Shown: in pieces, positions 25,774 through 52,227 of the stretch | Layout: each line of letters starts with the position of its first letter | How positions within the stretch are numbered: the stretch's first letter is position 1 | Source: Botryllus schlosseri | Taxonomy: Eukaryota | Length of the DNA: 64,000 nt | Assembly (NCBI GenBank): GCA_051294905.1 | Contig: CM119382.1 | Span: 7,378,001 to 7,442,000 of the forward strand | Direction of reading: 5' to 3' | Translations under genes and position numbers: made by a program | Notes under the pieces: generated by a model | What the model saw: the letters and a program-made list of their open reading frames with translations, nothing else | What the model was told of the DNA's origin: nothing | The model's database searches: none

Positions 25774-26650
25774 TCCATGATACATCGATCACATACTTAT
25801 ACTTCAACAGTTAAAAATTCGTCCGTACAGCGACGACATTACCTGTGTTTGTTTGTTTTGGGGTATTAATGGTGTTTGTCGACTACTATGGTCATTTACA
25901 CCAGGCCGATATTCTACTTACTTTCCGTAACTGCCGACTTATAGCACGGCCCACCTCTAGGCTTTTGTAAGACACGTCAGCAGATGAGGTGGCGATTACC
26001 TGTGAAACGAGGACTCCTGATTGTTGACTGATTCATTCACCCGCAATCGTGTTATCGCGCGTAAATGAGAAATATACCGCATTTGTATTGAGATCAGGAT
26101 ATTAGGACATGTATTAACAAATGATCGTGAGGAAAAACAACAGATATAATATTATAAACTAAACTGTTCTAAATTCTAAAACATCTACGTTGAAACAGTC
26201 AGTTAGTCAGTCAGTATGCTTTATTCATCTCACCAACAAACACATGTAAATTGGTATAGATTGGGAGACGACGGGGGACCGGTAGGTCTTAGATTCAGTC
26301 GCCACCCAGCGGAGTTATGAATGAGTAAATATGGCAAGATCAATACTAACGATAATGACAGTTAACCAATGGACATAAAAATATACAAAAGATAAAAGTC
26401 ATGGAAAATCAGCGGAACTTGTGAACTATACGCCGGTATTTCCCGGTCATGGTGAACACGTCTACTTTAATGTTTCCCCATGAGCACTCATTGTTTTCAT
26501 GGGGCGCACTTTCTCTTTTTGCCTTTTTCCCTTTGCATTCTCTCGAATCTATCCCGAAAAAGTGCTGACTCAGCATAAAAGTAGTTACGAGGTTTGAGTT
26601 TGTTCCGTCCGCTCCAATTTTACAGGATTTTGCACAAGCCGTCGTACGTC

Positions 26651-29600
26651 TTAATCCCGCCGTAAGATTTCGGCGGGGATCGGTCCTTTGCACAGCACGA
26701 CCTCTGGATTCTGCGATTGTAACAATTTGAGCCCTTTGTTTCTCAAGTCTTCAGCGTTCATGCGCAGGGCCGCATTGCGCATTCTTGACTTTTCCGTTTT
26801 TGTCTTGCTCAGATGAATAAACCTCCTGTTTATTCGTTCAATGCCCAAAAGCTTGATGTGCTTTGCATTTTCCTTGGTGGTCATATGGTAAAGTACTTCA
26901 CTCCCACCGTATTCCTTATACGGCGGAGGCATGCCCTTTGTATGCCCGTGCGCGGCGGCGAGTCCTGATTCTGAGACTACGGCCCTGTCGCATTTTCCCA
27001 TGATGGATTTTATTTCCTCGATATCCATTGGTACCCCAAGTTTTTCGCGGACTACTCGGCAGGCATCCTCCCAGGGATGGTATCCGTTCATTGCGTTATC
27101 GCAACTTTCGTGCCGGCAGTGAAACATCAATACCCGCTGTATTTTCTCTCCGCGGGGCATTTTCAGAGTGTACCAAGGTTCCTCTCGCTTCGGGATTGTA
27201 GCCCAAACATGTGGGTCGTCGTCCCCAGCGGCCATCTCCATCCAATAGGATCGAGACAATCCATCCGACGTGAATACTTGTAGTGTGCTTAAATGGATTA
27301 CCTCCTTTATTTGGAATCCCGAGAGATGGTTGAGCCATCTTTGAATCAGGGGCTTTGGACTCGGATTCTTTGCCTTGTCCGTCATCCTCTTAAGGAGTCC
27401 GAACACCCCTGTGTTATCCGTGATTATCGTGAAGGGTAGGGCACGCAGCATTGACTGCCATTTTTCCACCGAATCTTTTAGGGCTTTCAGTTCCTTCGTA
27501 CATGGATCATAGGCCTTTGCCGCCGGAGTTACCCATTTCTGGCTGAAATAAGCGATCGGGTATACTTCTTTAAACGGTGGTTTGCTTCCTTCCTCCGTCT
27601 GGAAGATCACCGATCCGAACCCTACATCCGACGCATCCGTTTCTACAAAAAGTGGAAGTTCCGGATCCAGATGGTACAAGACCCTGGCATCGTCGAGTGA
27701 CGCCTGTGCCGTTTTGTAGTCTTGCACCAGTTCATTGGTCCAAAGTACCGGTGTCACTCTGCCTTGTGTCGCAGGGACGTTACCGGTCAGCGCATCGAAT
27801 TTAGCCAGTTTAAGGCTTAGCTCCGGGATATGCTCGGAGATGTAGCGGAGAGCGCCGATCCATCCCCGTAATTCATATATGTTATGGGGTGGTGAAAGTT
27901 CCCGTAGAGCCCTTATCCTCTCGGGCTGAACTTCAATTTCTTTTCCCGTCAGGGTTGCACCCAATAGGTTTACCCTCCGCTTTCCAATGAAGCATTTATT
28001 GACACTGACCGTCAATTTCATTTCCGCAAGTTGTTCAAACACCAGGCGTAGTAGTACCAAATGGTCGTCCACCGTTTTTGTGCTAAGGAAAATGTCGTCT
28101 ATGTAGGCCTCCATAGGCGTTGCATTCTCCTCATCCGTCCGGCCATTTTGTTTCATGTGATGCTGGTATTTTTCTGTGATGGGTTTCACCACGCATTCTT
28201 GCATGTTGGCGCTCCAAAGAGCAACTGCGGTCTTCAAACCCATCGGCATCTTGCGCCATCGCACGTGCATTCCTTTGATGGCTATACCCACGTATTGTTT
28301 AGACCTTTCCGTGACATCCATGTGGAAATAGGCCTTCTTCAAATCTAGGAGTGAAAGCACTTCTCTGCCTTGGGCTAGTTGCTTTACATCCGGTACTAGT
28401 GGCGGAGGTACTTCTATCGATTTTATGGCTGCATTCAAGGGTTTGAGATTCTGTACCACCCTCCATGATTGCTTCCATCCGTCCTCCTGTTTCTGTCTTT
28501 CGTTCATTTTTTGAGGAACAACAAATATTGCCAACTTCCATTCAGCGAATCCTTGTTCGATTACACCCAAGTCTAGGAAGTTGTCCACTGCTTCTTTTAA
28601 AGCCTTCGCCTGGCCCTCCCCCTTCAGATTATAAGGCCCTGACACAAATGGTTTCGTCGACGGGTCCTTAAGTTCGATGTCACATTTGTATTTCATGGCT
28701 TGCGGGGCGCCTAGGTGGCCCCGCAGGTCCTCAAGTTCGGACGCAAACGGTGCGTAGACGGCTTTCCAGACGTCATCGGGTATGATGGTATTTTCTGGAG
28801 TCGTCAGGTCAGGAGGCTTGTACGGGAGTTTGGCCAGTGCTACTGATTGGGCACAGATTTTCTCAAGTTCCGTCTTGACGCTTGGGTGAGTGTCTTCTCG
28901 TAAAACATACGTAGTAACTGGTCCAGCCATAGGCTGGTGTGGACGTCGTGATGATCGAGGTTTCGGTGTTGGTGGAGAGAGGGTGAGGTCCTTTGCCATA
29001 GGCCTCTGATCTCGGCGCGTGCCCGCGCTTACCGTCACGCCGACGGAATCGATTTCTCCCGTCGGGGACCCTGTTTCTGGGGAGACGTGCATCCTAAAAT
29101 CCCCAGACTCCTTGTCGGACATGACCGGACGTATATCCGGTTGATCGACAATAGCTGCTTCGTTTGAACCTTTCGGGACAGTAGTCATTACTGTGGCTGT
29201 CGTCATGCATCTATGGGCCGAATCATCACAGTCATTCGGACAAGTGCATCCACGAGAGCATTTAGGACCAGTTTTCTCGTGCAGGTCCTCATTTACGCCA
29301 GCGGGCATTCCACGCTCGACGTCAGCTGTAGCAGTCGTCATGCATCTATGGGCCGAAGTTCTGCAGTTCTTCGGACAAGTGCATCCACGAGGGCTTTTGG
29401 GACCAGTTTTCTCGTGCAGGTCCCAATCAGCTGTAGTGATCGCCATGCATCTATGGGCCGGATTATTACATTCATCCGGACAAGTGCATCCGCGATAGTT
29501 TACAGGACCAGTTTTCTCGTGCAGGTCCTCAATTACGCCAGCGGGCATTCCACGCTCGACGTCTTCATTAATGGTGTCAGCAGGCATTCCTGTCTTGACA

Positions 29601-30313
29601 TCAGCATTTTCCCTTAGGTTCTGTGTGACGTTAGTTGCGATTCTCAACTCGTCGGTCGCACCAGTGGCGATTTCCATCTCGGCACTCGCGCCGGCGGCAA
29701 TTTTCCGCTCCACGCTATCTTGGTTTGCAGCCTCCATCAACCCATCGTCGATTACAGTGTCGCGAGTACTGTTTCCGACGTTGGTTCCGTCCCGTTCATC
29801 ACACGGGTTCTCGTCATGTATCGTTACCAAGGACAATTCTTCATTTGCGTTAGACGGGGTTTTTAATTCAGTTGCTATGCTTGGTAATTGTTGGACTTGA
29901 TCAATCCATTTTAAGCCAACAATATTGAGAGGGACTCCTTTCCCGGTCGCAAATGGAACCGGTAATCCATCAAAATCAATTGTAACTAAGGAGTCCACAT
30001 GGGAGGAGCCCCCTATGCCACGTAACTTCATATCTAAGGGTTGGCGTTCCTCCCAACTTTTTGGGTACATGGTTTGTACGACACTTTTCATTATCAAATT
30101 GGGTATGCTTCCCGTGTCGGCCAGAAATTTCGTACCAGTTGTCGAATCAACTAAGTACAAAAGCCGACCGCCGAATAACTCCGTAAAGTTAGGCTGTAGA
30201 GGGTTATCCGGTGTATCAAGAAAAGTAAATAGGGGTAAAGAAGCATTATGTAAAGTTTTTGTGTGTTGTGGAAGTAATTTGTCTGGGAGCTGATTTACCG
30301 GATCAATCAGCAC
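26651..30313 (-). CDS. pol: Pol polyprotein: aspartic protease, Cys/His-repeat spacer, reverse transcriptase, RNase H, Tpt1/KptA 2'-phosphotransferase; no integrase
   Basis: PR FLADTGS and NIVGLKWI. RT LDLKKAYFH, MPMGLKTA, YIDD. Ty3/gypsy-type RNase H TDASDVG...PIAYFSQK...KELKAL...TDN. C-terminal RH...HGHT...YHMT...RRFIHLS...IPAEIL. No HHCC or DD35E motif. Probably made by -1 frameshift from gag. Confidence 0.93.
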   Translation of the reverse strand: MLIDPVNQLPDKLLPQHTKTLHNASLPLFTFLDTPDNPLQPNFTELFGGRLLYLVDSTTGTKFLADTGSIPNLIMKSVVQTMYPKSWEERQPLDMKLRGIGGSSHVDSLVTIDFDGLPVPFATGKGVPLNIVGLKWIDQVQQLPSIATELKTPSNANEELSLVTIHDENPCDERDGTNVGNSTRDTVIDDGLMEAANQDSVERKIAAGASAEMEIATGATDELRIATNVTQNLRENADVKTGMPADTINEDVERGMPAGVIEDLHEKTGPVNYRGCTCPDECNNPAHRCMAITTADWDLHEKTGPKSPRGCTCPKNCRTSAHRCMTTATADVERGMPAGVNEDLHEKTGPKCSRGCTCPNDCDDSAHRCMTTATVMTTVPKGSNEAAIVDQPDIRPVMSDKESGDFRMHVSPETGSPTGEIDSVGVTVSAGTRRDQRPMAKDLTLSPPTPKPRSSRRPHQPMAGPVTTYVLREDTHPSVKTELEKICAQSVALAKLPYKPPDLTTPENTIIPDDVWKAVYAPFASELEDLRGHLGAPQAMKYKCDIELKDPSTKPFVSGPYNLKGEGQAKALKEAVDNFLDLGVIEQGFAEWKLAIFVVPQKMNERQKQEDGWKQSWRVVQNLKPLNAAIKSIEVPPPLVPDVKQLAQGREVLSLLDLKKAYFHMDVTERSKQYVGIAIKGMHVRWRKMPMGLKTAVALWSANMQECVVKPITEKYQHHMKQNGRTDEENATPMEAYIDDIFLSTKTVDDHLVLLRLVFEQLAEMKLTVSVNKCFIGKRRVNLLGATLTGKEIEVQPERIRALRELSPPHNIYELRGWIGALRYISEHIPELSLKLAKFDALTGNVPATQGRVTPVLWTNELVQDYKTAQASLDDARVLYHLDPELPLFVETDASDVGFGSVIFQTEEGSKPPFKEVYPIAYFSQKWVTPAAKAYDPCTKELKALKDSVEKWQSMLRALPFTIITDNTGVFGLLKRMTDKAKNPSPKPLIQRWLNHLSGFQIKEVIHLSTLQVFTSDGLSRSYWMEMAAGDDDPHVWATIPKREEPWYTLKMPRGEKIQRVLMFHCRHESCDNAMNGYHPWEDACRVVREKLGVPMDIEEIKSIMGKCDRAVVSESGLAAAHGHTKGMPPPYKEYGGSEVLYHMTTKENAKHIKLLGIERINRRFIHLSKTKTEKSRMRNAALRMNAEDLRNKGLKLLQSQNPEVVLCKGPIPAEILRRD

Positions 30314-30328
30314 CCAAAGGCGTTTTTT
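30285..30328 (-). promoter_or_regulatory. -1 programmed ribosomal frameshift signal at the gag-pol junction
   Basis: Slippery heptamer A AAA AAC (30328-30322) in the gag frame, a 6-nt spacer, then hairpin GGG-U-GCUGAUU...AAUCAGC-U-CCC (30315-30285). Pol is in the -1 frame and open through the site. Confidence 0.88.
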
Positions 30329-33291
30329 GAGAGCTGTATTCCTTGATCGAGCTCTTCATCCGTCCAGTGTGACGCATCGTACCGACGCGGGTTTCGAGGG
30401 TATTGCGGCTCCGTCCAGGCGGCCACCTGGCCATTGCTCTGGGGTGGTTGAGCAGGCGGTCCTTGGGGACCCCATTGGTCCCTATTGTGCCAATGGGTCC
30501 TATCCCGATTTTTCGGTCGCGTGTCGAAGTAGTTTTCGCACAGGACCGTTCGCTGAACAAATGAAGGAGAGCGTTGGGCCGCAAGGTACCTGTCAAGGTC
30601 CCGGATCGTTCGCAGGTTATTCTGCCTCAGAAACGGTCCCCAGTTTCGTTCCGCGGCTTCCTTTAGGTAGGCAGGTACTGGCCGTGTCCGCGCTCGTATG
30701 ACCCATCCTAAGGTGTCATCCTTGGCGAGTGCCTCGTCGTTGAGCCAAAGGATAAATTTGGCCACGCAATTGCGGGACTGGTGTCCGGGCGCCTTGCAGT
30801 AATAGCACACCGAGAGTGCCTGTCCCCGGGGTGGATCCAAGTACAAGCCTAGAGGGGCGAAGATGTTAGGATTACCAAGGAAATTGTACCTCTCACCTTG
30901 GGTTTCTGCTATGTTGCGAGCTTCCTGGCTGTTTGACGGGGTGATTTGCGAGCTATCTCCCCCCATTCCTGAATCCTGTGTGTTCATCATTCGCGGACTC
31001 ATCATTCGCGGGCCATGATTCGAAGCACCAGGTCCAGGTTGGAACCTTGGTTGTCCCGCCGATCCCGGCGGGGCGTTGTAGGTGTTACGAGGTCGCACTT
31101 GTCCAGGCCTCGGGGCCTGTGCCCGTCTTCCAGGTCCAAATCCGTTCCCTCCGCTGACAGGCGGGCGGCCGGTTCGAGCCATACGATGTGGATTGCGGCG
31201 CGGGCCATCCCCAGCCAATTGTCGCGGTGACAACTGTCCTACCGGTCTAGGAGGTGTACTTGTACCACCAAACATGTTCGGCGGCTGCAGGGGTGAAGGT
31301 GGCTGCACCACCGGAGGTGGCGTCGGTCCCAGGGGAGGTGGAGTGTTTAACTGTCCATCTCCACCTCCGTGCGCGGGATAGCTGTGCATCATTGGTCCCG
31401 CAGGCTGAACATTATAGATGTGTACCGGCGGTAGCGGCGACGACTTCTCGCGCGTTTTATCGGTCACCCGGGTGGGTAGACTCATTTCTTGCTCATCCAG
31501 GAACTCGGAGTTCCAGTATAACTGTAGTTCCTCTGCCACATCTTGCCATGACTTGTCGTCCCAACCCCGCATGAGCAGTCTAAGGGATTCTGGTAATTTT
31601 TGTCGCAAATTGCGGAAGAGTCGCAGTCCATCCTGATTCGCGTTGATCTCGTCATACATGTTAATCTCCAGCTGTTTCAGGGCGCTGTTCAGTAGCGGCA
31701 ATGGCTCTATCTCCCAACAATAGTTTCTTCGGAAATCGTTGATTACTCTCTCATTGTTTACCAATCCTTGAGGATTGGATAGCGATAGCGCTTTCATCAC
31801 TGAGGACCACTTCGCATTTCCTGAATTAGTGTTAAAGAAGTTCCCCAGCTGGTTGGCTTGCTTGGTACGTCCCGCACTTCGCAATTTCTTTTGCATGGCG
31901 TTGGCCAGGATAATATCCGCATCGGTATCGCCCTCACCGTGTCGTACACGTTTCATCGTATTCGCCATCCACTTCAGGAGGGGCATATCCCCTGGATCCA
32001 TCATCAGCTGTAGCATTTCCTTCTCTGATTGAAACCTCACAGGCGTGGTGAGCATCGGGTGTTGCGGGAGTGGGTGCGGACGTGGGGTCGGACTTCGTGG
32101 TCTCTCCCCGCCTTCCCTTGGAGTGGACGCGTATTGCGGTAGCCTGAGGTACTCCGGGCTACCTGATCTTTCGTCCCCATGGTATCCCGTAGCGAAGTGC
32201 TCGGGGCTGAGAAGGTTCGTCGTGGCGTTCCTGCAGGCTGCCAAGGACTCCCTCGCCTTATCCATCCTCTGAGTCAATCGGCTCAGCTGGGCGTTGACCT
32301 TGTCTTCTATGCGACCAGGGCTTTCGTCACTGTTTCGCGGTCGTTGGTCTTCCCGGAAAGTAACGCGTCTTGTTTGATCGCTGTCTGTACTGCTAGTCCG
32401 CCCTTTGGAGCCTCTAGTCGCCTGTCGGTCCTCGAGCCACTTATTGAGTTGTTCATGGCTTAGCGGGTAGCCTCCGTCGGATTCCGATCCAGTATCGGTT
32501 TCTGTTTCCTCCGAGTGGAGTGGTCCGGGCGTGTCCACGAGGTATCTCGTTAGACGAGGGCTATTTATACTGGCAAGCGTTCGCAGGTGATCGTAGGACC
32601 TTGGGGTCGGACCTCCCTCCGCGCCTATTTGTTTAGGGCGTGTCCCGCCTCCTGTGCGGAAGCTCGGAGCAAGTCCAAGCTTGGAGCCTGACGGAGGGGC
32701 TGTTTCTGAACCCGGCAACGTTGGGTACACAGCCGTCACCGTATGGCAATCCAGACCCTTCTGAACCGTAAACGTGGGCATAGGCGCCACATCCATGCTT
32801 GTTCGTACCGCAGCCGGGTCATAAGCCGGTGGAGGTGCCGTAGCCATTACAGACAGAGAAGGAGGTGGCGGCGGTTTATCCCCCACAACTTGTGCATGGG
32901 CTACGCCCAGTTCGAATTCCGACTTCAGGATTTCGTTCAGTACTGCGGTGGAAACTTTCCCGCTTGCTTTTGAAGTTGCGCTGCACACTGCTTTGAGGTC
33001 GGCCTGAGCCTGCCTCACTTCCTTCTTGGCTTTCTCTAACCCTTTCATCGTTTCGGGCAGAGTCGACTTGATTTCTTTTAGCGCTTTCGTTTGTTCCTCT
33101 ACGTTTCTTGCCAGTTGTTCCTCTTGTTGTCTGACATCTTCGTGGCGTTTTTGCGTTGCTTTCAGCAGTTTGATTCCCTGCTCGAGTTCGCCAGCCGCCT
33201 TTGACGGCTTCTTCTTCTTCTGAAATAACTTAAACATTCTTTGCATAATTTGCTTAAAAGTTCGATTGTCTGTTAGCTGATGCTTGACCAC
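30307..33291 (-). CDS. gag: Gag-like polyprotein (994 aa open frame; first ATG at 33246)
   Basis: CCHC zinc knuckle CYYCKAPGHQSRNC, N-terminal coiled coil, PPPAY late-domain-like motif and Pro-rich regions. Lies directly upstream of pol. Confidence 0.88.
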   Translation of the reverse strand: MVKHQLTDNRTFKQIMQRMFKLFQKKKKPSKAAGELEQGIKLLKATQKRHEDVRQQEEQLARNVEEQTKALKEIKSTLPETMKGLEKAKKEVRQAQADLKAVCSATSKASGKVSTAVLNEILKSEFELGVAHAQVVGDKPPPPPSLSVMATAPPPAYDPAAVRTSMDVAPMPTFTVQKGLDCHTVTAVYPTLPGSETAPPSGSKLGLAPSFRTGGGTRPKQIGAEGGPTPRSYDHLRTLASINSPRLTRYLVDTPGPLHSEETETDTGSESDGGYPLSHEQLNKWLEDRQATRGSKGRTSSTDSDQTRRVTFREDQRPRNSDESPGRIEDKVNAQLSRLTQRMDKARESLAACRNATTNLLSPEHFATGYHGDERSGSPEYLRLPQYASTPREGGERPRSPTPRPHPLPQHPMLTTPVRFQSEKEMLQLMMDPGDMPLLKWMANTMKRVRHGEGDTDADIILANAMQKKLRSAGRTKQANQLGNFFNTNSGNAKWSSVMKALSLSNPQGLVNNERVINDFRRNYCWEIEPLPLLNSALKQLEINMYDEINANQDGLRLFRNLRQKLPESLRLLMRGWDDKSWQDVAEELQLYWNSEFLDEQEMSLPTRVTDKTREKSSPLPPVHIYNVQPAGPMMHSYPAHGGGDGQLNTPPPLGPTPPPVVQPPSPLQPPNMFGGTSTPPRPVGQLSPRQLAGDGPRRNPHRMARTGRPPVSGGNGFGPGRRAQAPRPGQVRPRNTYNAPPGSAGQPRFQPGPGASNHGPRMMSPRMMNTQDSGMGGDSSQITPSNSQEARNIAETQGERYNFLGNPNIFAPLGLYLDPPRGQALSVCYYCKAPGHQSRNCVAKFILWLNDEALAKDDTLGWVIRARTRPVPAYLKEAAERNWGPFLRQNNLRTIRDLDRYLAAQRSPSFVQRTVLCENYFDTRPKNRDRTHWHNRDQWGPQGPPAQPPQSNGQVAAWTEPQYPRNPRRYDASHWTDEELDQGIQLSKNAFGC

Positions 33292-33603: not shown

Positions 33604-33630
33604 CGATGAGTCAGCGTTATACCGGAAACA

Positions 33631-33648
33631 ATCCCAGTGGTGCCTCCA
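33631..33648 (-). other. Primer binding site complementary to the tRNA-Thr 3' end
   Basis: TGGAGGCACCACTGGGAT matches 17/18 to the complement of the animal tRNA-Thr(AGU) 3' end as I recall it (ATCCCAGCGGTGCCT-CCA). It is preceded by ...AAAACA-TC. Confidence 0.82.
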
Positions 33649-34037
33649 GATGTTTTAAAGTGCAGCTCCAATAACGATTGTTATGCGAGTAGTCCACACT
33701 TGGTTCGGGTTATTTCGCGGTGAGGAGTTGACTCTTCTTTTGTACTCGAGCTGTCCAGACGACGTTCTTGGATATTGATTGAAGTATCCGTAGCGGTTGC
33801 AATGTTGTATATCCAAGTAGTCAATGACCGTTAGGTCCAGAATTCTAAACTAACCTATGCTAACGTGTAATCTAAACCTTAATACAACCAAATACTCCAA
33901 TGTTAATCATGCAAGCGGAAATGAGGTAACTCTATGCGAAACTCGGTTAAATTGGCATACACAACATTCATCAATTATAACACGAGGCATGGTTTAACCT
34001 ACTCAACGTCATGCACAAATAACTCATTTCAAATACT

Positions 34038-34208
34038 CCAAGGTTTGTTTACGCATTTTTATGCGACGGCCTTTCCTGCCGGAAATTTGTGTATATCCAA
34101 GGGTTTGTTTACACATATAATGCATGTGACGGCCTTTCCTGCCGAAAAGTAGCTCCAAGGTTGGTTTACACATATAATGCATGTGACGGCCTTTCCTGCC
34201 GAAAAGTA
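34038..34208. repeat. Three ~57-bp tandem repeats (CCAAGG...GACGGCCTTTCCTGCCGAAAA)
   Basis: Copies start at 34038, 34097 and 34155. Confidence 0.9.
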
Positions 34209-35748
34209 CATACATGACATATAGTTTCACATCCCTCAATTACAATAGTCATGCACGAACTAATAATGATTACAATTCGTTATCTTTCTGGGTTCTTTTC
34301 GCATTGGTGTAAGCTTTTTATTCATTCGTATGTACCGTGTCTCACAGGCAATAGACCTGATTTACCACGAATCCTAAACTCTACACATGCTCCAATAAGG
34401 TAGAGGGTCCTAGCTTAGTCTAAGGGCGCGTAGCTAGTTATAACGCGTAATTAAGACCTAATTATTATCTACAGGCACAGTACTTGACATTAAATTATTG
34501 CAGTGACAACCAATTACTCACATATTAAATGTTCATCAACTCACGCATATATCTAAGACATAAAATGTTAGCGCCATTTTAAAGCAACCTGATGGTATTG
34601 GTCAAAGATACAGTAAATGAAGCGTTTGAACACAATAAGGAAAATTGGCATCATCATACAATAATACATCAAACCCTCACATGAAAGTACCCATCAGTTC
34701 GTTTATGACGCGTAACGCCGGAAGGTTCTGACATTAAGGACGTCGCCTCTTTGACCCAATTGACAAGATCATGTGCCTGGTTAATTGCACGTTGATCCTA
34801 TCAACATGATCATTATGCCTGGTTAGAGTGCATGTGCGTTACTACCCTTAACAAGGTGTTGTTTATTCGAACACTGCCAGATACCAATGGTCCCTTGCGG
34901 GTTTCGTTCCGTTACAGTTCGTTATGATTCTCGTGTCCCGTCACCGTGCCGCAGATTGAACTATGCCATCGCTCGTCCAACGCATCTTTTTCGATCTCCA
35001 TCAGCGTTTTTTCAGGACACCTTCGGCAATCGTACGTTTGAGTACTCAATCTCGTGCATATCTTTTCGAACCCGATTTCTTTGACTCCTTTGATCATGAA
35101 ACAATTTTTTCTGCCGCAGCTTGTCATGATCGTCTCTTCCTCCGTTACTGTTAACGGGAATTCTTACGGGCTTGGTTTGGCACGTTCCAACCTTTGGTTC
35201 ACTGTCCCTTTGTTAGCAGTGATTGATGGTTGTGCCGGATTTCCTTTTATTTCTTCTATTACACTTCGTTAAGCCCTCGAGAGGAGTAATATTTTCGGGA
35301 TCTCGTTTGCACTCTTAGAGTTAGTACTCCCAAGTCGTGTATTATCGCCAGCAGAGTGTCTTGCTATTGCTTTGGTACGAGTATGGCATTTCTTTCTCGG
35401 TATTGTCCAGACGGTATCACTAGGTCTTGTCATACAAATTTTGGGTACATTCGATGTTCATAGAGAGGGCATTGAAATAGACACATATCAGAATATCGCG
35501 AGATTTGTTATCGTAACGCTACTACAATATAGTAATTTGCATACATATACAGATCACGGTGCGATAACTGCGCTTGCCAAGCACATCCATTTCGTAAAAC
35601 GAATGTGCAGACAAGGTGGGTCTATCCCTAATGTCCTACTCAACCATCGACACATCAGTTTCGAAAAACAAATGTGTGGACCGGTTCATGGGTTATTTTT
35701 CCTAAGGTCTATTGATAGTAGTACCGGCCCAAGGTATTTTTACTTTTT

Positions 35749-36168
35749 TTAGTCCTAATTCTAGTCCTAATTTTAGTCCTAATTCTAGTCCTAATCATTC
35801 TCGGTTATAGTCCTAAACATTTTGGAAAGTCTGTCCGTCTTATCCAAGATCTAAAATCAAGGTACGGATCTATATCCATTGTGGATATTGTCCTTAACAT
35901 TTTAGAAAATCTGTCCGTCTTATCCAGGATCTAATATCAAGGTACGGATAGATAATAGTTTAGATATTGTCCTTATCATTTTGGAAAATCTGTCCGTCTT
36001 ATCCAAGATCTAATATCAAGGTACGGGTGTTGTACTTAACATTTTGGAAAATCTGTCCGTCTTATCCAAGATCTAATATCAAGGTACGGATGTATTAATT
36101 ATAGTGGCCCTAATTGTTTTGGAAAATCTGTCCGTCTTATCCAGGATCTAAGATCAAGGTACGGATAG
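35749..36168. repeat. Five TAGTCCTAA units followed by five ~49-bp repeats with variable linkers
   Basis: Core TTTTGGAAAATCTGTCCGTCTTATCCAAGATCTAATATCAAGGTACGGA at ~35820, 35900, 35979, 36042 and 36117. Confidence 0.9.
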
Positions 36169-36217
36169 ATAAGTTATTCCACGAGGGTGTAGGTACTGAC
36201 ACGGATGTTGCGTCATA

Positions 36218-36236
36218 TCTCTTTTCTCCCCCTCTC
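36218..36236 (-). other. Candidate polypurine tract
   Basis: 19 consecutive purines GAGAGGGGGAGAAAAGAGA followed by TA-TG. This is the longest such run I found between the glycoprotein genes and the PBS. Confidence 0.65.
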
Positions 36237-36439
36237 AAATTCGCATAGTTTGAATGCTTGGCACCTGTCGGTTTTACAAGACATCCACATAACGGTCATT
36301 CACATAAGGGTCCGAGCCCAAGTCCAACCCAACTACCTCTTCGTGCAACACACGTTGTATGTGACATGTCCAACACAACTACTCCTCCAACCACTTCGTA
36401 TTGTTAAACTCATTTACCCCACAAAGGCATTTTTTCCGT

Positions 36440-36795: not shown

Positions 36796-36892
36796 ACCTT
36801 ATTTACACACTTCGGGTTTTATTTTTTTAGAATGTTTTTGGTGGATTTGCTAATGCTATATTGTGTCACCTATATACATTATTTACATTACA

Positions 36893-42582: not shown

Positions 42583-45500
42583 TTATTTTTTCGGTTTCAA
42601 ATTCGGTCCTTCAGCCAACGTCGTCATCGTTGTCATCGCCGTCCATACTTGTTCATTGTTCCTTCTTTGAACCTTTTTTACCTGCCCCATAGATCTATTT
42701 TTTCCGTATTTCATACCCGCAATCCACAAAAATACTATTACTGCCACCAGCCCCATCGCCACAACGATTGAATATTGTGTGTTCGGGCCCCGTTTAACAA
42801 TCCCTCCCCCGGTATCTATCGTAGGGGAAAAGATATGTCTTACCGAATACTGCTCCTCCATCTGTAGCAGCTCCTTCAGTCTGTCGTAGTAGCCGAAACC
42901 ATCCTGGGACGGTTTCCCAGAATCCTGGGCACGCGGCGCTCTGGTGAGATTCGAAAAGGGCCCTGCCATCCCCCGCGTCACTTGTCCAGATCGCGAGACG
43001 GTGTCGGTGGTTGTCGGCCCGGCGACCCACGACGTTCGAAAGGGACTGGTCGGTCGCACTCGTCGTTCCGAGGCTTGGGCCTGCGTTGTTGCCAGAAACC
43101 GTGTAGAAACAGCGGTCGCCGCACCCATCGTCGTCGAGACCCGGGGAATAATTGGCACCGCGATTGGGGTCGTCCCTGCTGGTGTTGTCGTGGAGGAGAG
43201 CGTCGAAGAGGCGACAGCGTATGAGCCGATATTCGACAGAACTGATTCCGTCGCTACCGCGTTGGTGACGGAAGCCAACAATGTCCCCACCAATTGTTCC
43301 GTAGATAAGAGTTGTTCTCCGGTGATCATGAAAACCGTATCGCCAGGTGTAGCTTTACTCATAGCTCCGTCACTAGTCGACTCCACCGACGTGATGACGG
43401 GATTGGTCATCGTAGTCGCTTCCGGTGTTGTGGACGCAATCGTCGTAACAAGGTCATGTGTAGATCGCGGGGCAATACGTCCGGTGGTTAGTAGGCGTGT
43501 TGTTATGCCCGGTCCTGTCGTAGAGCTTTCCAAACTCCTTACTTCATCCGTCATGGCTCTGCTTATTGCTATGGTCGTCGGCGACTCGGGTATGGTGGCC
43601 TCTGTTGGCTGCTTTGGTCCGGTCGCCGAGAGATCCCAATGGAGGCGGGTAGTAATTTCCGAACGCGTAGGTTTCGTTAGAGAAAACCTTCTATGTACCG
43701 ACGCACCGGCCCCACCTTGCAAATTCGACAGTGTTCCAAAAAAACCCTTCGTTGGCCGTACAGTGTCGACGCGCTCCGCGGTCAGGTACAAATTCGGCGT
43801 CACGGTTTTCGCCGTGGTCGCCGTCGTTTGGCCCTGAGTGGCGGGCGTTCCTGTCCGAATAGACAAGAAAGTGACACTGTCCGTCGTCCACCGTTCAGCA
43901 TTCTCTGCAGCACCCGCAATTCTGGTAGTCTCCATCATTCGAGCACTAGTTGGTCTGACAGGCGTGGTCACAGATAAGGTTACGGTCGTTCCTCCCTTGC
44001 CGGACTCGGGGTCTCGGGGTGATGGAGTCGCGGTTGCGGCGGCCGCTGAAGATGCGGCAGTGGTCGAAGTGGTGTATTCGGCCAAAGTCGTCACTATTGT
44101 TGATTGTTCTGTAGACACTGGTATGCTCGTCTGTAGAGTAGTGTCCCGAGGAGTAGTAACCTTCGTCGTTGCCTGAGTAGTCGTCCTCGTGGGGTTTGTG
44201 CTCATTTCTGATACAGCCGGCGCATCTGCGGTGCCAGGGGAAGGCCCTGTCGGGGTTCGACCAAATGTCACAGGAGCGCCCGCTGCGGCAGGACTCCCGG
44301 TTGTTGCCATGGACGCCGTGGTTGTCTCGACCCGTTTCGTATACCCTACTGAATCTGCAGTAGTATCGCGGGGGGTCGATGTGAATTTGATCCCTTCGGT
44401 TTTCATCGTCGAATCCACCTGCGCCAGTTTCAAACTGGCCACACTGAATATGGCTGTAGGCGTCGTCGTAATCAAGGCTTCGGTTGTGGACATTGGCGGA
44501 ATGGACGTAGTGGGTCCCTCAGTAGACGCTTCCACCGCCGCAAACGCGGTCTCTTGATCGAGCAACGGCGTTCTTGGAGTTTGTTTACTGGTTATTTCCG
44601 AATATCTAAGGCGGGTAGTTGCGAGATACGTTGTGGTGTCAGGAAAAACGGTGTTCTCTGTGGTGACGACTGTAGTAGGGAGCCAGTACGTGCCCTCAGT
44701 TGTCCGCGGCGCTGTCGCTGGCGCTGTCGTAGGAATTGTCGTTGTTGTAATCGAAGTGCCAGGTTCGAACGAATTCATAGTGGCGTCCGTAATAGTTGCA
44801 GGTTCAAATACAGTTGTTTCTACCGTTGACCGTTCCGAAGCCACAGGTATTCGGGTCTGATGAGTAGTCTCTGGAAGAAGTGTGACCTTCGTTGTTTCCC
44901 AAGTAGTCATCTTCGTGAGTGTCGCGCTCATTTTTGGTACAACGGACACATCAGAGGTGCCCGTAAAAAACTCGGCCGAAGTTTGATTAGCTACTGTAGG
45001 AGGGCTCGTTGTAGTAGAACCGGACGTAGGTCGGGAGTCCGTTTGCAAGGTATCGCCAGTCCAGCTACTGGCGGTTGTTACCGGGCTTGTTTGTTGTGTC
45101 GTGAACGGTCCGGGCGCTGCCGGGGTTTGGGATTGCGTCGTCATGAGTATCTCAGTTGTACTAACATGAGTTGGCCAAGTACCGCTGCGAGTTGCCAGTC
45201 GGTGGTTCGTTGATTCGAATCCCGTCGTTGAGCTTACGGGAACTCTTACTGGTGTTGTTATTTTGACGCTAGTTTCCTGCGCAATCGTTGAAACCCCACT
45301 CGATGATAGAAACGTGGGTTGCGTACCCCTTGTGGTCGCAATCGTGGACCTGTGAACGAGTAGCCTATCAGATGTTTCTCCTAAGGCCACTGCAGAGTAC
45401 TCGTCACTATAATAGTCCCCGTAACCACTTTCGTTATACGCGGACTCGTACCAGCTGTTGTTGTAGTCGTAAGCGTACTCGTAGTAATCTTCATCGTAGG

Positions 45501-47277
45501 CAAAATCGGAATCTTCTTCCCGGTCGGCCTCGTACGGGGAGGTAGGAGTTGCACTGGCCGTACTAATTCGAGTACGGGGCGTAATTGGTGGCGGCAGCGG
45601 TTCTGCAACGGTCGTGACAGAATACGTAGCGTGAGGAATATACAACATTTTTCCTTGGCACAACAGGACCTTGTAGGCCGTCCTGGGTTTGAATAGTTTC
45701 AGCTCGAATTGGCGTGCTTCCCGCAACTTTTGTGTGGCCATAATATTTAGTAAAGCCATATTCACCTTATCGCGCTGTTTCTCACGAGTCTGGTTTACCC
45801 TGAGAGCCCATTGGAAAGGCAGAACTTCCACCGGTGTCAACGATTGATTCCAACCCGCACGATTTTCCCGCATCTTCGTTAGCGGAGCGGCTGCTTCCTT
45901 TAGAATTTGTCGTGTCTTCGTAACATAGAACAACCTCAGACGAGACAGCCAACCCTTTATGCCTTTCTCTCCTTGTTCCGACTCCATAGTGGTCGATGAC
46001 AACATGAGGGTCCCCTCTAACCAGTTGCAAGGAGGTTGTCCCGAGGACCAACCCTGAGGCATTGTCGCCTGGTTGCCAGTTTCCAACGCTGCTGCGCGTA
46101 TTCGGCCGAAACGGTGGTCTGCAAACACAGGTTGATTCCCATAGGGGTCGTACGTCACTTCCCCGGACATTAGAGTCACTTTTAGATTTCCTACTGCATT
46201 TCGGCATTTCTTTTTGTTCTTCTTCCGTTTACATCGCCGGCTGCCCTGCAGTAGGGTGGGAAAGTTTTTGTCATCGTTCAGTGTTTTGGCGTCCCTATTT
46301 AGGAACCTGATGAGCGCGTGAATCTTCCGTCTGTACCGGCCATGGCCATCGAAATTCACGGGCCTATCTCTAGGACCCGTCTTGTTTCGAGCTCGCAGCC
46401 AAACTAGGTCACCTTCCAACAGAGGCACTGGGACACCGCCCGGCCATTGGTTGTACGAGTCGGTCAGCTGTATGTCTGCATCAGTACCTCTAATACTGTC
46501 GTCGATTTCAAGAATCACGATATCCCGTCCTAGGGTATTGGCGATGAAACGGCGTCCAGCAATCGTGCATTCCACACACATCATTCCGCGAGATTCGGAG
46601 TTCGCACAGGTCTGAAACCGGTGCGTTTTAACTATCCATCCTTCAACCCCGTCCGAGCGAAACTCGCACGTCGATCTCACCGTCGCGTATTGTGCCAACA
46701 TATTCATAACTAATATTTTAAATACCGTTAGCACTTGTCGCATTCCAGGGTCGAGTGGGAAGGGTTGACCCGGAGTTTTTTCATGCTCCCAGGTGTGTAT
46801 TAATCCGAAGCTTTTATTGCGATGGTACGTGGTGTTCCCGAACAAAGCCCGCAAGGAGAGGTTCGGTAAGATTCCGGACATATTTCGATCACATCCACAT
46901 GCTCGTTCGTATTTACGCGCTGAGTCCCAATACCGAGCTCCGTGATTCAAATCTGCCAGTAATTTGTACAGTCGGCTACGGCCTGCTCGCATCTGCCCAA
47001 AGGTGGGTGATTCGACAAGTATCGGGAATCTCCGCAACGCCAAGCCTTCCGGCCATTTTCCAGATAGTCGAAACAGTTGATTCAGGCTTACTGTCCTCTG
47101 AACCTGGTCCTCCAGGAGCGTCCATCCCGTAAGGTTGAAATTTTCCATGTTTTCCGCGTGCATGACAGATAAGGGGAGTAGGGCTTCGTTGGTCTGGGGT
47201 TTCACGAGGCTCACACATATGACCATCAACAGGGTCTGCTCGGGCCCGCATCCATTCGGGTAGGTAGTTATCCGCAT
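42583..47277 (-). CDS. 1564-aa type I membrane glycoprotein: Env-SU-like N-terminal domain, Thr/Ser/Pro mucin stalk, TM, basic tail
   Basis: RYWDSARKYERACGCDR...PNLS is shared with the upstream Env. About 900 aa are T/S/P-rich. TM YSIVVAMGLVAVIVFLWIAGM. Confidence 0.85.
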   Translation of the reverse strand: MRITTYPNGCGPEQTLLMVICVSLVKPQTNEALLPLSVMHAENMENFNLTGWTLLEDQVQRTVSLNQLFRLSGKWPEGLALRRFPILVESPTFGQMRAGRSRLYKLLADLNHGARYWDSARKYERACGCDRNMSGILPNLSLRALFGNTTYHRNKSFGLIHTWEHEKTPGQPFPLDPGMRQVLTVFKILVMNMLAQYATVRSTCEFRSDGVEGWIVKTHRFQTCANSESRGMMCVECTIAGRRFIANTLGRDIVILEIDDSIRGTDADIQLTDSYNQWPGGVPVPLLEGDLVWLRARNKTGPRDRPVNFDGHGRYRRKIHALIRFLNRDAKTLNDDKNFPTLLQGSRRCKRKKNKKKCRNAVGNLKVTLMSGEVTYDPYGNQPVFADHRFGRIRAAALETGNQATMPQGWSSGQPPCNWLEGTLMLSSTTMESEQGEKGIKGWLSRLRLFYVTKTRQILKEAAAPLTKMRENRAGWNQSLTPVEVLPFQWALRVNQTREKQRDKVNMALLNIMATQKLREARQFELKLFKPRTAYKVLLCQGKMLYIPHATYSVTTVAEPLPPPITPRTRISTASATPTSPYEADREEDSDFAYDEDYYEYAYDYNNSWYESAYNESGYGDYYSDEYSAVALGETSDRLLVHRSTIATTRGTQPTFLSSSGVSTIAQETSVKITTPVRVPVSSTTGFESTNHRLATRSGTWPTHVSTTEILMTTQSQTPAAPGPFTTQQTSPVTTASSWTGDTLQTDSRPTSGSTTTSPPTVANQTSAEFFTGTSDVSVVPKMSATLTKMTTWETTKVTLLPETTHQTRIPVASERSTVETTVFEPATITDATMNSFEPGTSITTTTIPTTAPATAPRTTEGTYWLPTTVVTTENTVFPDTTTYLATTRLRYSEITSKQTPRTPLLDQETAFAAVEASTEGPTTSIPPMSTTEALITTTPTAIFSVASLKLAQVDSTMKTEGIKFTSTPRDTTADSVGYTKRVETTTASMATTGSPAAAGAPVTFGRTPTGPSPGTADAPAVSEMSTNPTRTTTQATTKVTTPRDTTLQTSIPVSTEQSTIVTTLAEYTTSTTAASSAAAATATPSPRDPESGKGGTTVTLSVTTPVRPTSARMMETTRIAGAAENAERWTTDSVTFLSIRTGTPATQGQTTATTAKTVTPNLYLTAERVDTVRPTKGFFGTLSNLQGGAGASVHRRFSLTKPTRSEITTRLHWDLSATGPKQPTEATIPESPTTIAISRAMTDEVRSLESSTTGPGITTRLLTTGRIAPRSTHDLVTTIASTTPEATTMTNPVITSVESTSDGAMSKATPGDTVFMITGEQLLSTEQLVGTLLASVTNAVATESVLSNIGSYAVASSTLSSTTTPAGTTPIAVPIIPRVSTTMGAATAVSTRFLATTQAQASERRVRPTSPFRTSWVAGPTTTDTVSRSGQVTRGMAGPFSNLTRAPRAQDSGKPSQDGFGYYDRLKELLQMEEQYSVRHIFSPTIDTGGGIVKRGPNTQYSIVVAMGLVAVIVFLWIAGMKYGKNRSMGQVKKVQRRNNEQVWTAMTTMTTLAEGPNLKPKK

Positions 47278-51079: not shown

Positions 51080-52227
51080 TAATCAATTCTCTCTTATTTG
51101 TCCCCGTGCTATAGCTAGGTCAGGGTGTTTAATTCACTTGTTCCATATGAGACCTAGTGAATCTAATGCCCATATTTCCGATGTTCAAGTACATCATTGT
51201 TCATTTACTGGTAAAACACTGCACACGCCGATGTTTTCATGTTTCACCTAGGTGCCGTGTAAGTCTACGGCGTTTACTTCACTTGTACCAAATCAGCAGT
51301 AAGCATCCGAGCATAGTACTGTTATACAATACACAGTGTGCACAGCAAAAATATGCAGCAAAGCAAGGACAATGAAGACGAACCAAGTGGAACAGTATTA
51401 CATCACAGCCAATGCAAATCATGGACCATGACAGTATTCTTCAACAACAACAACGACAACAGAGGAAGGTGTAGCAAGTGAAACAGTATTACATCACAGT
51501 CATTACAAATTATACCTATTTCAGTATTTTTCAACAAGAAAATTCAATTTTATATTAAACGTAATCCAACTGGCAAGTGCTACACTTTTGTAAAAGGTAA
51601 TCTGTATATGAAAAGTGTCGTAAGCGTTCGGAGTGAAGTGAAGGTGACTGTCCGTACCATCCCTAGAGTGAAGAACATACGATTACAGGCTATAACATGA
51701 AAACAGTTGAGACGCAAGTCCTGCACCGAGAATAGGAAACTATAATGTCAATAAAAATCAAAATATTATACTGCATGGAATTACGCAGGACCTTTAGTCG
51801 TAGGACAATCTAACGATGTACAGATTGGCAGAGATATGGTATTGTAGGCTACTTAATACCGGAATTGATTGGCGTACTTTGGCAAACGCAACTGTGAAAA
51901 GAAGCAATATGAAATGCAATGAAACGCAACATGTATGTGACAGTGAGTTTTGTGATTGATGGCAAGGCTTGACATGTATATAGGGCGTTAGGGCCGTCAA
52001 GACGTTGGAATATATGCATAGAATTTGAAAAGTTACGGGGCAAGCAATTGTGTAATACAAAGTAAAAATGCATAGACCAGCGTCAAAGATATCAAACACA
52101 GTTTCATCAGGATTGGTCTAAATCAATTCAGTTTTGTGGAAAAGAAAATGTTCAGCCCATGATTGAAAGAGAAAAGCAGGAATAAATATAGTAAGTAGCA
52201 AATACAGAATTCGAACACAAAAACTTC

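What the first reader, a model, noticed from the sequence alone, without database searches (positions are those of the whole stretch)
25930..51125. Enveloped, integrase-less retroelement integrated as a circular permutation, apparently through its own IS1595/Merlin transposase
Seen: the sense order is transposase, env, mucin-env, accessory ORFs, PPT, LTR, PBS, gag, pol. Each gene occurs once, all are on one strand, no terminal LTRs were found, and pol has no integrase. Joining the two ends restores the canonical LTR-PBS-gag-pol-[recombinase]-env-PPT order, with the DDE transposase where integrase would normally sit. Known: LTR elements form 1-LTR circles, and pararetroviruses lack integrase and transcribe from circular episomes. 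Inference: a ~25 kb virus-like element whose reverse-transcribed circle is inserted, and possibly excised, by a captured DNA-transposon enzyme acting between pol and the transposase gene. A full-length RNA could only come from an excised circle or a tandem copy. I know of no described family with this combination, but I cannot search.
Basis: partly seen in the sequence, partly recalled or inferred. Interest (0 to 1): 0.97.

Follow-up and report, generated by a model that had tools for sequence, protein, structure and literature searches.

The report
Retrovirus-like element with transposon ends
A 24.9-kb virus-like element carrying gag, pol and envelope-type genes but no integrase sits in this genome bounded by the short inverted ends and 8-base target duplication typical of a Merlin/IS1595 DNA transposon, whose transposase it also encodes. 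No search here found a description of this combination.

Summary
The element spans window 26414-51289 on the minus strand, not 25930-51125.

**Gene order.** IS1595-family transposase, class-I-like glycoprotein, mucin-like paralogue, three small paralogous ORFs, about 5 kb of non-coding repeats, gag (CCHC), then pol in the -1 frame (protease, RT, RNase H, Tpt1-like domain). All large ORFs are intact. There is no integrase and no LTR pair.

**New evidence for transposase-type insertion.**
- The ends are imperfect inverted repeats, 16 of 21 bases, starting GG and ending CC.
- A perfect 8-bp duplication (GCTGATTT) abuts both ends. This matches the Merlin/IS1595 signature.
- The 5' end is shared with three related contigs.

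**The transposase belongs to the element.**
- It evolves under strong purifying selection (dN/dS 0.04-0.08).
- It lies directly upstream of the envelope-type gene in five loci.
- In one relative it lies directly after pol.

The window's order is therefore a rotation of gag-pol-transposase-env, cut exactly at the inverted ends.

More distant relatives also lack integrase and lack the transposase. One carries an APE-type endonuclease in that position and sits as a head-to-tail tandem.

**Not shown:** that the inserted DNA was a reverse-transcribed circle. The PBS and LTR labels in the window are also unverified.

I found no published description.

The parts
26406..26413 (.). Target-site duplication, copy next to the 3' end (GCTGATTT read on the minus strand)
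   Evidence: Identical 8-mer abuts both ends
26414..26434 (-). 3' terminal inverted repeat (element ends ...CC)
   Evidence: 16/21 identical to the reverse complement of the 5' end; 0 of 200,000 random 21-mer pairs reach this
26435..26650 (-). Non-coding tail downstream of pol
   Evidence: Alignable with the tail of relative L013 to within about 20 nt of the inverted repeat
26651..30313 (-). pol, intact ORF in the -1 frame relative to gag. Protease DTGS 30107-30118; three Cys/His repeats 29204-29521; RT 27950-28486 (YIDD 28094-28105); RNase H 27314-27742; Tpt1/KptA-like domain 26684-27085. No integrase.
   Evidence: Pfam RVT_1 9e-19, RT_RNaseH_2 8.5e-19, PTS_2-RNA 1.3e-6; PDB matches; motif coordinates
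30307..33291 (-). gag, intact ORF. CX2CX3GHX4C knuckle 30766-30807; heptamer A AAA AAC in gag register 15 nt before the stop; 7-nt overlap with pol.
   Evidence: homologous to the gag ORFs of L001, L002, L003, L008 and L009
33292..33603 (-). Small ORF (103 aa) with a hydrophobic segment, directly upstream of gag; status uncertain
   Evidence: no Pfam match
33604..38387 (-). Non-coding region, 38.5% G+C. 57-nt repeats 34061-34208; 63-79-nt repeats 35806-36166; polypurine run 36218-36236; AT-rich 21-nt repeats 36443-36784; several AATAAA signals. Presumed regulatory ('LTR-like') region; boundaries undefined.
38778..40548 (-). Three small paralogous ORFs: 187 aa at 38778-39341, 191 aa at 39493-40068, 135 aa at 40141-40548
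   Evidence: shared motifs seen by eye; no Pfam match
40806..41464 (.). 64/127-nt tandem repeat array between env2 and the small ORFs
42583..47277 (-). Second glycoprotein (1564 aa): N-terminal domain paralogous to the first env, mucin-like Ser/Thr/Pro-rich region (residues ~600-1450), C-terminal membrane anchor
   Evidence: homologues follow the first env in L004 and L006
47359..49941 (-). Envelope-type glycoprotein (860 aa): hydrophobic N-terminus, 13 N-glycosylation sequons, polybasic site directly before a hydrophobic peptide (507-525), long helices ~509-719, membrane anchor ~788-815
   Evidence: (secondary structure only); homologues in L002, L004, L005, L006, L007 and L015
50063..51079 (-). 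IS1595-family DDE transposase. Catalytic D172 (50564-50566), D235 (50375-50377), E273 (50261-50263); CxxC...CxxC zinc-ribbon-like motif 50807-50887.
   Evidence: dN/dS 0.04-0.08
51080..51268 (-). 5' leader. Contains a second direct TIR-like 21-mer (51124-51144) and an adjacent inverted weaker copy (51150-51170).
   Evidence: 60-76% identical among four lineages against 44% just outside the end
51269..51289 (-). 5' terminal inverted repeat (element starts GG...)
   Evidence: Contigs L005 and L007 start here. Similarity between L015 and the window starts here.
51290..51297 (.). Target-site duplication, copy next to the 5' end

Best explanation
Window 26414-51289 is one mobile unit. It is a retrovirus-like gene set from an integrase-less reverse-transcriptase lineage, and it has acquired a Merlin/IS1595-family DDE transposase together with that transposon's kind of ends. 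The gene set comprises gag, protease-RT-RNase H-Tpt1-like pol, two envelope-type glycoproteins and small accessory ORFs.

**Shown**
- The unit entered this site as a whole, with inverted GG...CC termini and an 8-bp target duplication. That is a transposase-type strand transfer, not an LTR/integrase insertion or a random break.
- The termini lie between pol and the transposase gene, so the integrated gene order is a rotation of gag-pol-transposase-env.
- The transposase co-evolves with the envelope genes under strong purifying selection.

**Inferred**
- The element's own transposase binds the terminal and subterminal 21-mers and carries out the insertion.
- The retroviral genes provide a particle and reverse-transcription phase. 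Supporting features are a -1 frameshift signal, a tRNA-type primer site in relatives, and a polypurine run.
- The form that spans pol to transposase (a circle, a tandem copy or a longer-than-unit RNA) is the template for full-length RNA. Its DNA copy, with the two ends brought together, would be the transposase's substrate.

Whether the element also moves directly as DNA is open.
For: - **Ends:** TIR 16/21 identical, and a perfect 8-bp duplication abutting both ends.
- **Family signature:** Merlin is described with GG-initiated TIRs and 8-9-bp TSDs, IS1595 with 8-bp TSDs (PMC8101967).
- **Shared 5' end:** the same end is seen in L005, L007 and L015.
- **Intact transposase:** the DDE triad is invariant down to 33% identity. 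Domain matches.
- **Selection:** dN/dS 0.04-0.08 at dS 0.8-2.6.
- **Linkage:** transposase-env adjacency in the window, L005, L006, L007 and L015. pol-transposase-env-env2 are contiguous in L006.
- **Composition:** GC3 is homogeneous across transposase, env, gag and pol (0.51-0.56) against about 0.40 G+C in the host flanks.
- **Intact genes:** all five large ORFs are intact. A AAA AAC lies in register before the gag stop, with pol in the -1 frame.
- **Integrase-less relatives:** L001 has an APE-type endonuclease fused to pol in the same slot (Exo_endo_phos 1.9e-18) and sits as a tandem of ~100% identical units. L002 has gag-pol-CUB-env.
- **Primer site in relatives:** L001 and L002 share a TGG-initiated 15-mer upstream of gag.
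- **RT affinity:** the best solved-structure match of the RT family is the cauliflower mosaic virus enzyme (1.2e-40), ahead of Ty3 and foamy virus. That enzyme comes from an integrase-less pararetrovirus.
Against: - Only one full-length copy was available, so the 3' end rests on this copy alone. L013 supports conservation up to about 20 nt before it.
- The TIR is short and imperfect, and a score-based local alignment did not find it on its own. It was recognised only after the boundary and the duplication were located.
- No circle or tandem junction of this lineage was seen.
- The pol-transposase spacer of L006 shows no significant similarity to either end of the window element and no clear abutted repeat.
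- No PBS was identified in the window.
- The envelope assignment rests on sequence features only: no Pfam or PDB match, and a poor structure model with pLDDT 35.
- The library type of the Logan runs (DNA or RNA) is unknown.
- The 4.8-kb low-G+C non-coding stretch might include an unrelated nested insertion.
Confidence: 0.7

Rival explanations
1. The element is a DNA transposon with viral cargo. It moves in the genome only as DNA, cut or copied at its inverted ends by its transposase. The retroviral genes either serve a separate, rarely used particle phase or are long-retained passengers. No reverse-transcribed circle is involved in integration. This would be the Teratorn situation with a retroelement instead of a herpesvirus.
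For: The TIRs plus 8-bp TSD are all that a DNA transposition needs. No circle junction was seen. No PBS was found in the window. A fusion of a cut-and-paste transposon with a whole virus has a precedent (PMC10175614).
Against: gag, pol and both env genes are intact and conserved across lineages whose synonymous sites are near saturation. That is not expected of passengers. L006 places the transposase inside the retroviral gene order, directly after pol. Relatives without the transposase persist and form tandems.
Confidence: 0.2
2. The locus is a chance product: two neighbouring or nested elements (a Merlin-like transposon with glycoprotein genes next to a truncated gag-pol retroelement), a truncated tandem of an ordinary provirus, or a misassembly.
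For: Only one full copy was seen. About 5 kb of host-like, repeat-rich non-coding DNA separates the env block from gag. One related fragment, L014, is a pol with several internal deletions, so rearranged copies do exist.
Against: The inverted ends and the duplicated 8-mer enclose both halves together. Each gene is present exactly once and is intact. Transposase, env, gag and pol share the same composition. L006 independently links pol to the transposase and env. The 5' end recurs in three other contigs.
Confidence: 0.05
3. It is an ordinary LTR retrovirus or retrotransposon whose LTRs and integrase were overlooked or lie outside the region.
For: gag, protease, RT and RNase H are of the Ty3/caulimovirus type, and the -1 frameshift signal is retrovirus-like.
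Against: No direct repeat pair exists in or around the element. The only long repeats in the window are 83-92% identical host duplications at 12-18 kb and 53-62 kb. No rve domain appears in any ORF. Four closer RT relatives also lack one. The ends are inverted, not direct, and the duplication is 8 bp rather than 4-6 bp.
Confidence: 0.02

Closest known systems
Merlin / IS1595-family DNA transposons
   Same: DDE_Tnp_IS1595 transposase with an intact D-D-E triad, inverted ends beginning 5'-GG, and an 8-bp target duplication.
   Different: Known members are reported as carrying a single transposase gene. This one is 24.9 kb and carries gag, pol and glycoprotein genes. The transposase has an N-terminal CxxC...CxxC motif, which Merlin and IS1016 members are reported to lack. 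The nearest prokaryotic match is only 25% identical over 105 residues.
Teratorn (piggyBac transposon fused with an alloherpesvirus, medaka)
   Same: A whole virus-like genome sits inside the ends of a DDE transposon and keeps the transposase as its integration module (PMC10175614).
   Different: Teratorn joins a DNA virus with piggyBac. Here a reverse-transcribing element is joined with a Merlin/IS1595 enzyme, and the transposase sits where integrase sits in retroviruses.
DIRS / Ngaro / PAT tyrosine-recombinase retrotransposons
   Same: An RT-RNase H element without a retroviral integrase uses an unrelated recombinase. (That DIRS integrates from a circular DNA is my own knowledge; the recombinase substitution is stated in PMC12440569.)
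   Different: There is no tyrosine recombinase, no inverted-terminal-repeat plus internal complementary region, and no split direct repeats. Here the enzyme is a DDE transposase and a target duplication is present. By my own knowledge DIRS makes none.
Caulimoviridae and endogenous pararetroviruses
   Same: No integrase. Protease-RT-RNase H whose best solved-structure match is the cauliflower mosaic virus enzyme. A CCHC structural protein. A tRNA-type primer site in relatives. Head-to-tail integrated tandem in relative L001.
   Different: Found in an animal-like or marine context, with envelope-type glycoproteins, a Tpt1-like domain, a transposase and defined ends. No movement protein. Membership was not tested by phylogeny.
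Envelope-carrying Metaviridae (errantiviruses and the like)
   Same: A gag, -1 frameshift, pol, env layout, with envelope genes apparently acquired independently in different lineages. L001 has an alphavirus-E1-like protein and the window a class-I-like one.
   Different: Those elements have LTRs and an rve integrase. This family has neither.

Membership tests
Merlin / IS1595 transposon superfamily | [quoted passage not shown] | tested here: met
   Pfam 1.4e-10. NCBIfam IS1595 model covered 2-214 of 215, E 1.6e-17, which is below NCBI's curated cut-off. D172, D235 and E273 are invariant in 7 sequences.
Merlin / IS1595 transposon superfamily | Terminal inverted repeats starting 5'-GG | tested here: met
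   GG...CC ends, 16/21 (17/22) identical. GG is also the first base pair in L005, L007 and L015. The repeat is at the short end of the reported 24-462 bp range.
Merlin / IS1595 transposon superfamily | 8- or 9-bp target-site duplication | tested here: met
   Perfect 8-bp GCTGATTT at both ends. One copy only.
Merlin / IS1595 transposon superfamily | Transposition catalysed by the encoded enzyme on these ends | not testable with these tools
   Inferred from the signature only.
LTR retrotransposons / retroviruses (Metaviridae, Retroviridae, Belpaoviridae, Pseudoviridae) | Pair of long terminal direct repeats | tested here: not met
   No direct repeat pair in or around the element.
LTR retrotransposons / retroviruses | rve-type integrase in pol | tested here: not met
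   Absent from pol and from all other ORFs. Absent in relatives P0001-P0003.
LTR retrotransposons / retroviruses | gag with nucleocapsid knuckle, aspartic protease, RT, RNase H | tested here: met
   The capsid fold was not verified.
LTR retrotransposons / retroviruses | tRNA primer-binding site and polypurine tract | tested here: inconclusive
   A polypurine run lies at 36218-36236. A PBS-like TGG 15-mer is shared by L001 and L002 but is absent from the window.
DIRS-like retrotransposons | Tyrosine recombinase, with inverted terminal repeats plus an internal complementary region or split direct repeats | tested here: not met
   No such domain or repeat structure.
Pararetroviruses (Caulimoviridae-like) | Integrase-less protease-RT-RNase H replicating through a circular episomal DNA | tested here: inconclusive
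   Lack of integrase and closest RT structure match are met. The circular episome cannot be tested here. No phylogeny with caulimovirus sequences was made.
Class I viral fusion glycoproteins | Signal peptide, polybasic cleavage site before a hydrophobic fusion peptide, long heptad-type helices, C-terminal anchor | tested here: inconclusive
   The sequence features are present, and long helices are predicted. But the model is poor (pLDDT 35) and there is no Pfam or PDB match.
Tpt1 / KptA RNA 2'-phosphotransferases | Tpt1 fold with the catalytic Arg-His-Arg-Arg set (the residue set is from my own knowledge) | tested here: inconclusive
   Domain similarity is clear: Pfam 1.3e-6, profile against PDB 5.7e-13. 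In the alignment, the Arg of the 'IRA..GHS' stretch is not conserved.

The most novel reading that the evidence does not exclude
This is a previously undescribed order of reverse-transcribing, enveloped virus-like elements. A Merlin/IS1595 transposase and its inverted ends replace integrase and LTRs. The element would alternate between a joined form (circular or longer than unit length), which yields full-length RNA, and a TIR-bounded chromosomal form made by the transposase. Its sister lineages fill the same slot with other nucleases (an APE endonuclease) or with none.
Probability: 0.45. Interest if true: 0.95.

Novelty: categorically new. Interest (0 to 1): 0.9.

Why it matters
Retroelements are classified by how they insert: integrase with LTRs, tyrosine recombinase, or target-primed endonucleases. 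An intact gag-pol-env element that carries a Merlin/IS1595 transposase and shows that transposon's inverted ends and 8-bp duplication would add a new insertion mode.

It would be a retroelement counterpart of the herpesvirus-piggyBac fusion Teratorn. It would also be a living example of a reverse-transcribing virus picking up a DNA-transposon enzyme as its integration module, which is the step proposed for the origin of retroviral integrase.

The wider family is integrase-less and carries a conserved Tpt1-like domain. Its nuclease slot is interchangeable: empty, APE endonuclease, or DDE transposase. Its closest RT structure match is to caulimoviruses. This bears on how pararetrovirus-like and retrovirus-like lifestyles interconvert.

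The element also escapes LTR- and TIR-based annotation pipelines.

Tried and rejected
- **Ungapped repeat searches** found neither LTRs nor TIRs.
- **A score-based local alignment** of the two end regions was not above shuffles. The TIR emerged only after the 5' boundary was fixed by comparison and the abutting 8-mer was searched for.
- **The 83-92% identical repeats at 12-18 kb and 53-62 kb** were considered as giant LTRs and rejected. They are too diverged for an element with intact genes, a host RING-finger exon lies between them and the element, and they lie outside the TSD.
- **Exact look-up of the window's env protein** found nothing.
- **Scans of other collections.** IMG/VR scans with pol and transposase profiles found nothing. 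The GTDB scan gave only a 25% match. The JGI metagenome scan gave two short gag-pol contigs.
- **The env structure model** was too poor for a fold search, so none was run.
- **The gag profile against PDB** matched only nucleocapsid knuckles, weakly.
- **The PBS search in the window** failed.
- **The L006 pol-transposase spacer** could not be matched to either end of the window element.
- **Paper searches** for this combination, for the run accessions and for Tpt1-bearing retroelements found no description.
- **Host species and library type** of the Logan and ENA samples could not be determined.


Full report
**1. What is in the window**

The window is about 40% G+C with few long ORFs, except between roughly 26 and 51 kb. 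There G+C rises to 46-55%, and a run of long intact ORFs lies on the minus strand. In sense order they are:

- **Transposase**, 338 aa. It matches Pfam DDE_Tnp_IS1595 (1.4e-10) and the NCBIfam IS1595 model over positions 2-214 of 215 (1.6e-17). It has an N-terminal CxxC...CxxC motif.
- **First glycoprotein**, 860 aa. It has a hydrophobic N-terminus, 13 N-glycosylation sequons, a polybasic site directly before a hydrophobic peptide, very long predicted helices and a C-terminal anchor.
- **Second glycoprotein**, 1564 aa. Its N-terminal domain is homologous to that of the first (E=2e-12). Residues 600-1450 are 42% Ser/Thr/Pro, and there is a C-terminal anchor.
- **Three small ORFs** that share motifs.
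- **About 4.8 kb of non-coding sequence** at 38.5% G+C. It holds three tandem-repeat arrays, a 19-nt polypurine run and several AATAAA signals.
- **gag**, 994 codons, with a CX2CX3GHX4C knuckle that is invariant in four family members.
- **pol**, 1220 codons, overlapping gag by 7 nt in the -1 frame. The heptamer A AAA AAC lies in gag register 15 nt before the gag stop.

pol holds a DTGS protease, three Cys/His repeats, RT (YIDD), RNase H and a C-terminal domain similar to Tpt1/KptA RNA 2'-phosphotransferases (Pfam 1.3e-6; PDB 5e-8; family profile 5.7e-13).

No integrase, tyrosine recombinase or other nuclease domain appears in pol or in the ORFs of the non-coding stretches. None of the five large genes has a stop or frameshift. 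Self-comparison shows that each gene is present once and that there is no LTR pair.

**2. The ends**

Three contigs from public sequencing runs carry close relatives of the transposase followed by the first glycoprotein gene: L005 (89% amino-acid identity), L007 (82%) and L015 (75%).

- L005 and L007 both begin at the position homologous to window 51289.
- L015 continues 253 nt further upstream into sequence unrelated to the window. Its similarity to the window begins at the same GGTAC.
- Identity is 60-76% inside this point and 44% outside it.

With this boundary fixed, the 8 bases directly outside it (GCTGATTT on the minus strand) were searched for downstream of pol. They occur once, 237 nt after the pol stop.

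The 21 bases inside the two 8-mers are inverted repeats, 16 of 21 identical (17 of 22), beginning GG and ending CC. None of 200,000 random 21-mer pairs from the element reached 16 matches.

The element is therefore 26414-51289, 24,876 bp, with an 8-bp target-site duplication. This is the published signature of Merlin (GG-initiated TIRs, 8-9-bp TSDs) and of the IS1595 family (8-bp TSDs) (PMC8101967).

The non-coding tail after pol is alignable with that of relative L013 up to about 20 nt before the repeat.

A second direct copy of the terminal 21-mer (18/21) lies 145 nt inside the 5' end, next to a weaker inverted copy. This pair is conserved in L005 and L015.

**3. Is the transposase part of the element?**

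- The catalytic D, D and E are invariant in seven sequences down to 33% identity.
- Between the window, L005 and L007 the gene has dN/dS 0.04-0.08 at dS 0.8-2.6. It has therefore been kept under strong purifying selection over long divergence while staying next to the glycoprotein gene, whose own dN/dS is 0.04-0.20.
- Its GC3 (0.56) matches gag (0.56), env (0.55) and pol (0.51), and differs from the flanks (0.40 G+C).
- Contig L006 (7 kb) carries, on one strand and without internal stops, the last 604 residues of pol (73% identical), then the transposase (55%), the first glycoprotein (33%) and the second (25%).
- L004 links the two glycoprotein genes.

The transposase gene thus sits between pol and env, the position integrase occupies in retroviruses. 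The window's order is the same circular map opened between pol and the transposase gene, exactly at the inverted ends.

**4. The wider family**

Searching pol's RT-RNase H-Tpt1 part against 5.8 and 1.8 billion proteins found only a handful of true relatives at 36-73% identity. All other hits are at about 25-30% identity; those listed with domain annotations are mostly integrase-bearing Ty3/gypsy-type polyproteins. The relatives come from ENA assemblies, marine metagenomes and sequencing runs. None has an integrase.

- **L001.**
  - pol ends in a full APE-type endonuclease domain (1.9e-18), in the slot after the Tpt1-like domain.
  - The env resembles alphavirus E1 (5e-19).
  - The element lies as a head-to-tail tandem of nearly identical units in the order gag-pol-env-small ORF-repeat-gag-pol.
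  - The second unit differs from the first by one indel in gag and is interrupted once by an unrelated transposon.
- **L002.** The order is gag-pol-CUB protein-env homologue-small ORFs, with no nuclease and no LTR pair within 23 kb.
- **Shared primer site.** L001 and L002 share a 15-nt motif beginning TGG about 100 nt after an AATAA signal and just upstream of gag. It has the form of a tRNA primer-binding site. The window has no match to it.
- **L014.** This is a pol fragment with several internal deletions.
- **RT affinity.** The family profile matches the cauliflower mosaic virus RT structure best (1.2e-40), then Ty3 (4e-35), then foamy virus (1e-22).

**5. Interpretation**

*Shown.* The 24.9-kb unit was inserted as one piece by a reaction that leaves inverted GG...CC ends and an 8-bp duplication. 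It encodes an intact enzyme of the family known for that signature. That gene is a long-standing, selected component of this retroelement lineage. The integrated order is a rotation of the order seen in relatives.

*Inferred.* The element's own transposase performs the insertion. The retroviral genes support a particle and reverse-transcription phase. A joined form (circle, tandem or longer-than-unit RNA) links pol to the transposase gene and is needed for a full-length transcript. In the integrated copy, the presumed promoter region lies between the env block and gag and points away from the transposase and env genes.

*Main rival (0.2).* Chromosomal spread is purely by DNA transposition, with the retroviral genes serving a separate phase.

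*Other rivals.* Chance juxtaposition, truncated tandem or misassembly (0.05) and an ordinary LTR provirus (0.02) are contradicted by the ends, the single intact copy of every gene, the shared composition, and L006.

**6. Limits**

- There is one full copy.
- The 3' end is supported by this copy only.
- No junction of the two ends was seen.
- The L006 spacer could not be related to either end.
- The library type and species of the supporting runs are unknown.
- The envelope and capsid assignments rest on sequence features.
- The 4.8-kb non-coding stretch may contain foreign DNA.
- *Slip.* Searches printed raw BLAST coordinates of relatives from which interruption points could be read. They were not used and are not repeated.

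**7. Novelty**

Full-text searches found no description of this combination. The search terms covered IS1595 or Merlin with retroelements, transposase with gag/RT/TIRs, Tpt1 with retrotransposons, and pararetroviruses of metazoans.

A 2025 overview of virus-like retroelements lists integrase-, tyrosine-recombinase- and unresolved (HEART) groups only (PMC12440569).

The Teratorn review calls that element the first fusion of a cut-and-paste transposon with a DNA virus (PMC10175614).

I therefore rate this as categorically new, with the caveat that the evidence is one complete copy plus fragments.

Noticed in passing
window 51124-51170; L005 122-168; L015 373-393: About 45 nt before the transposase ORF lies an inverted weak copy and, 5 nt later, a direct strong copy (18/21) of the terminal 21-mer. 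Together they resemble two element ends placed head to head. The arrangement is conserved in related contigs. It may be a transposase binding site or a relic junction.
   Followed up: partly
window ~50990-51010 (minus strand) and homologous sites in L005, L006, L007, L015: The conserved N-terminal residues of the transposase lie upstream of the first in-frame ATG in the window, L005 and L015. A conserved pyrimidine-rich ...GCAG|G motif sits there in every lineage. It may be a 3' splice site, meaning the transposase could be made from a spliced RNA.
   Followed up: partly
window 26684-27085 (pol C-terminus); P0001-P0003, L006, L013, L014, L016: A Tpt1/KptA-like RNA 2'-phosphotransferase domain is fused to RT-RNase H throughout this retroelement family. 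One Arg of the Tpt1 'IRA..GHS' stretch is not conserved. Its role in a retroelement is unknown.
   Followed up: partly
L001 721-4089 and 4040-6727: A relative carries a full APE-type endonuclease domain at the end of pol and an alphavirus-E1-like (class II) glycoprotein. The slot after the Tpt1-like domain and the envelope gene are both interchangeable within the family.
   Followed up: partly
L001 7716-7730 and 7884-7898; L002 7239-7253: An identical 15-nt TGG-initiated motif lies upstream of gag in two relatives that share only about 40% pol identity. It is probably a primer-binding site for the same tRNA. In L001 it lies in a 168-bp unit that is duplicated perfectly.
   Followed up: partly
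window 29204-29521: Three tandem copies of a 26-residue Cys/His motif (HEKTGP...RGCTCP..C...AHRCM) lie between protease and RT in pol. No family match was found.
   Followed up: no
window 12218-18073 and 53117-61849: Host segmental duplication, 83-92% identical and about 41-44 kb apart, on either side of the element. These are not LTRs.
   Followed up: partly
window 52228-52563 and 59967-60500: A C3HC4 RING-finger exon (1.1e-10) ends about 930 bp from the element's 5' end on the same strand. Further out is a weak GIY-YIG-like ORF (0.0026), possibly a remnant of another mobile element.
   Followed up: no
window 22196-22289 and 23664-23757: A 94-nt inverted repeat pair, 76% complementary and 1.4 kb apart, lies in the host flank. 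It may be another small transposon.
   Followed up: no
L003 4509-5369: In a 47%-identical relative, the 860 nt after pol contain no transposase or env ORF. Either pol is the last gene of the integrated form there too, or that element has only gag and pol.
   Followed up: no
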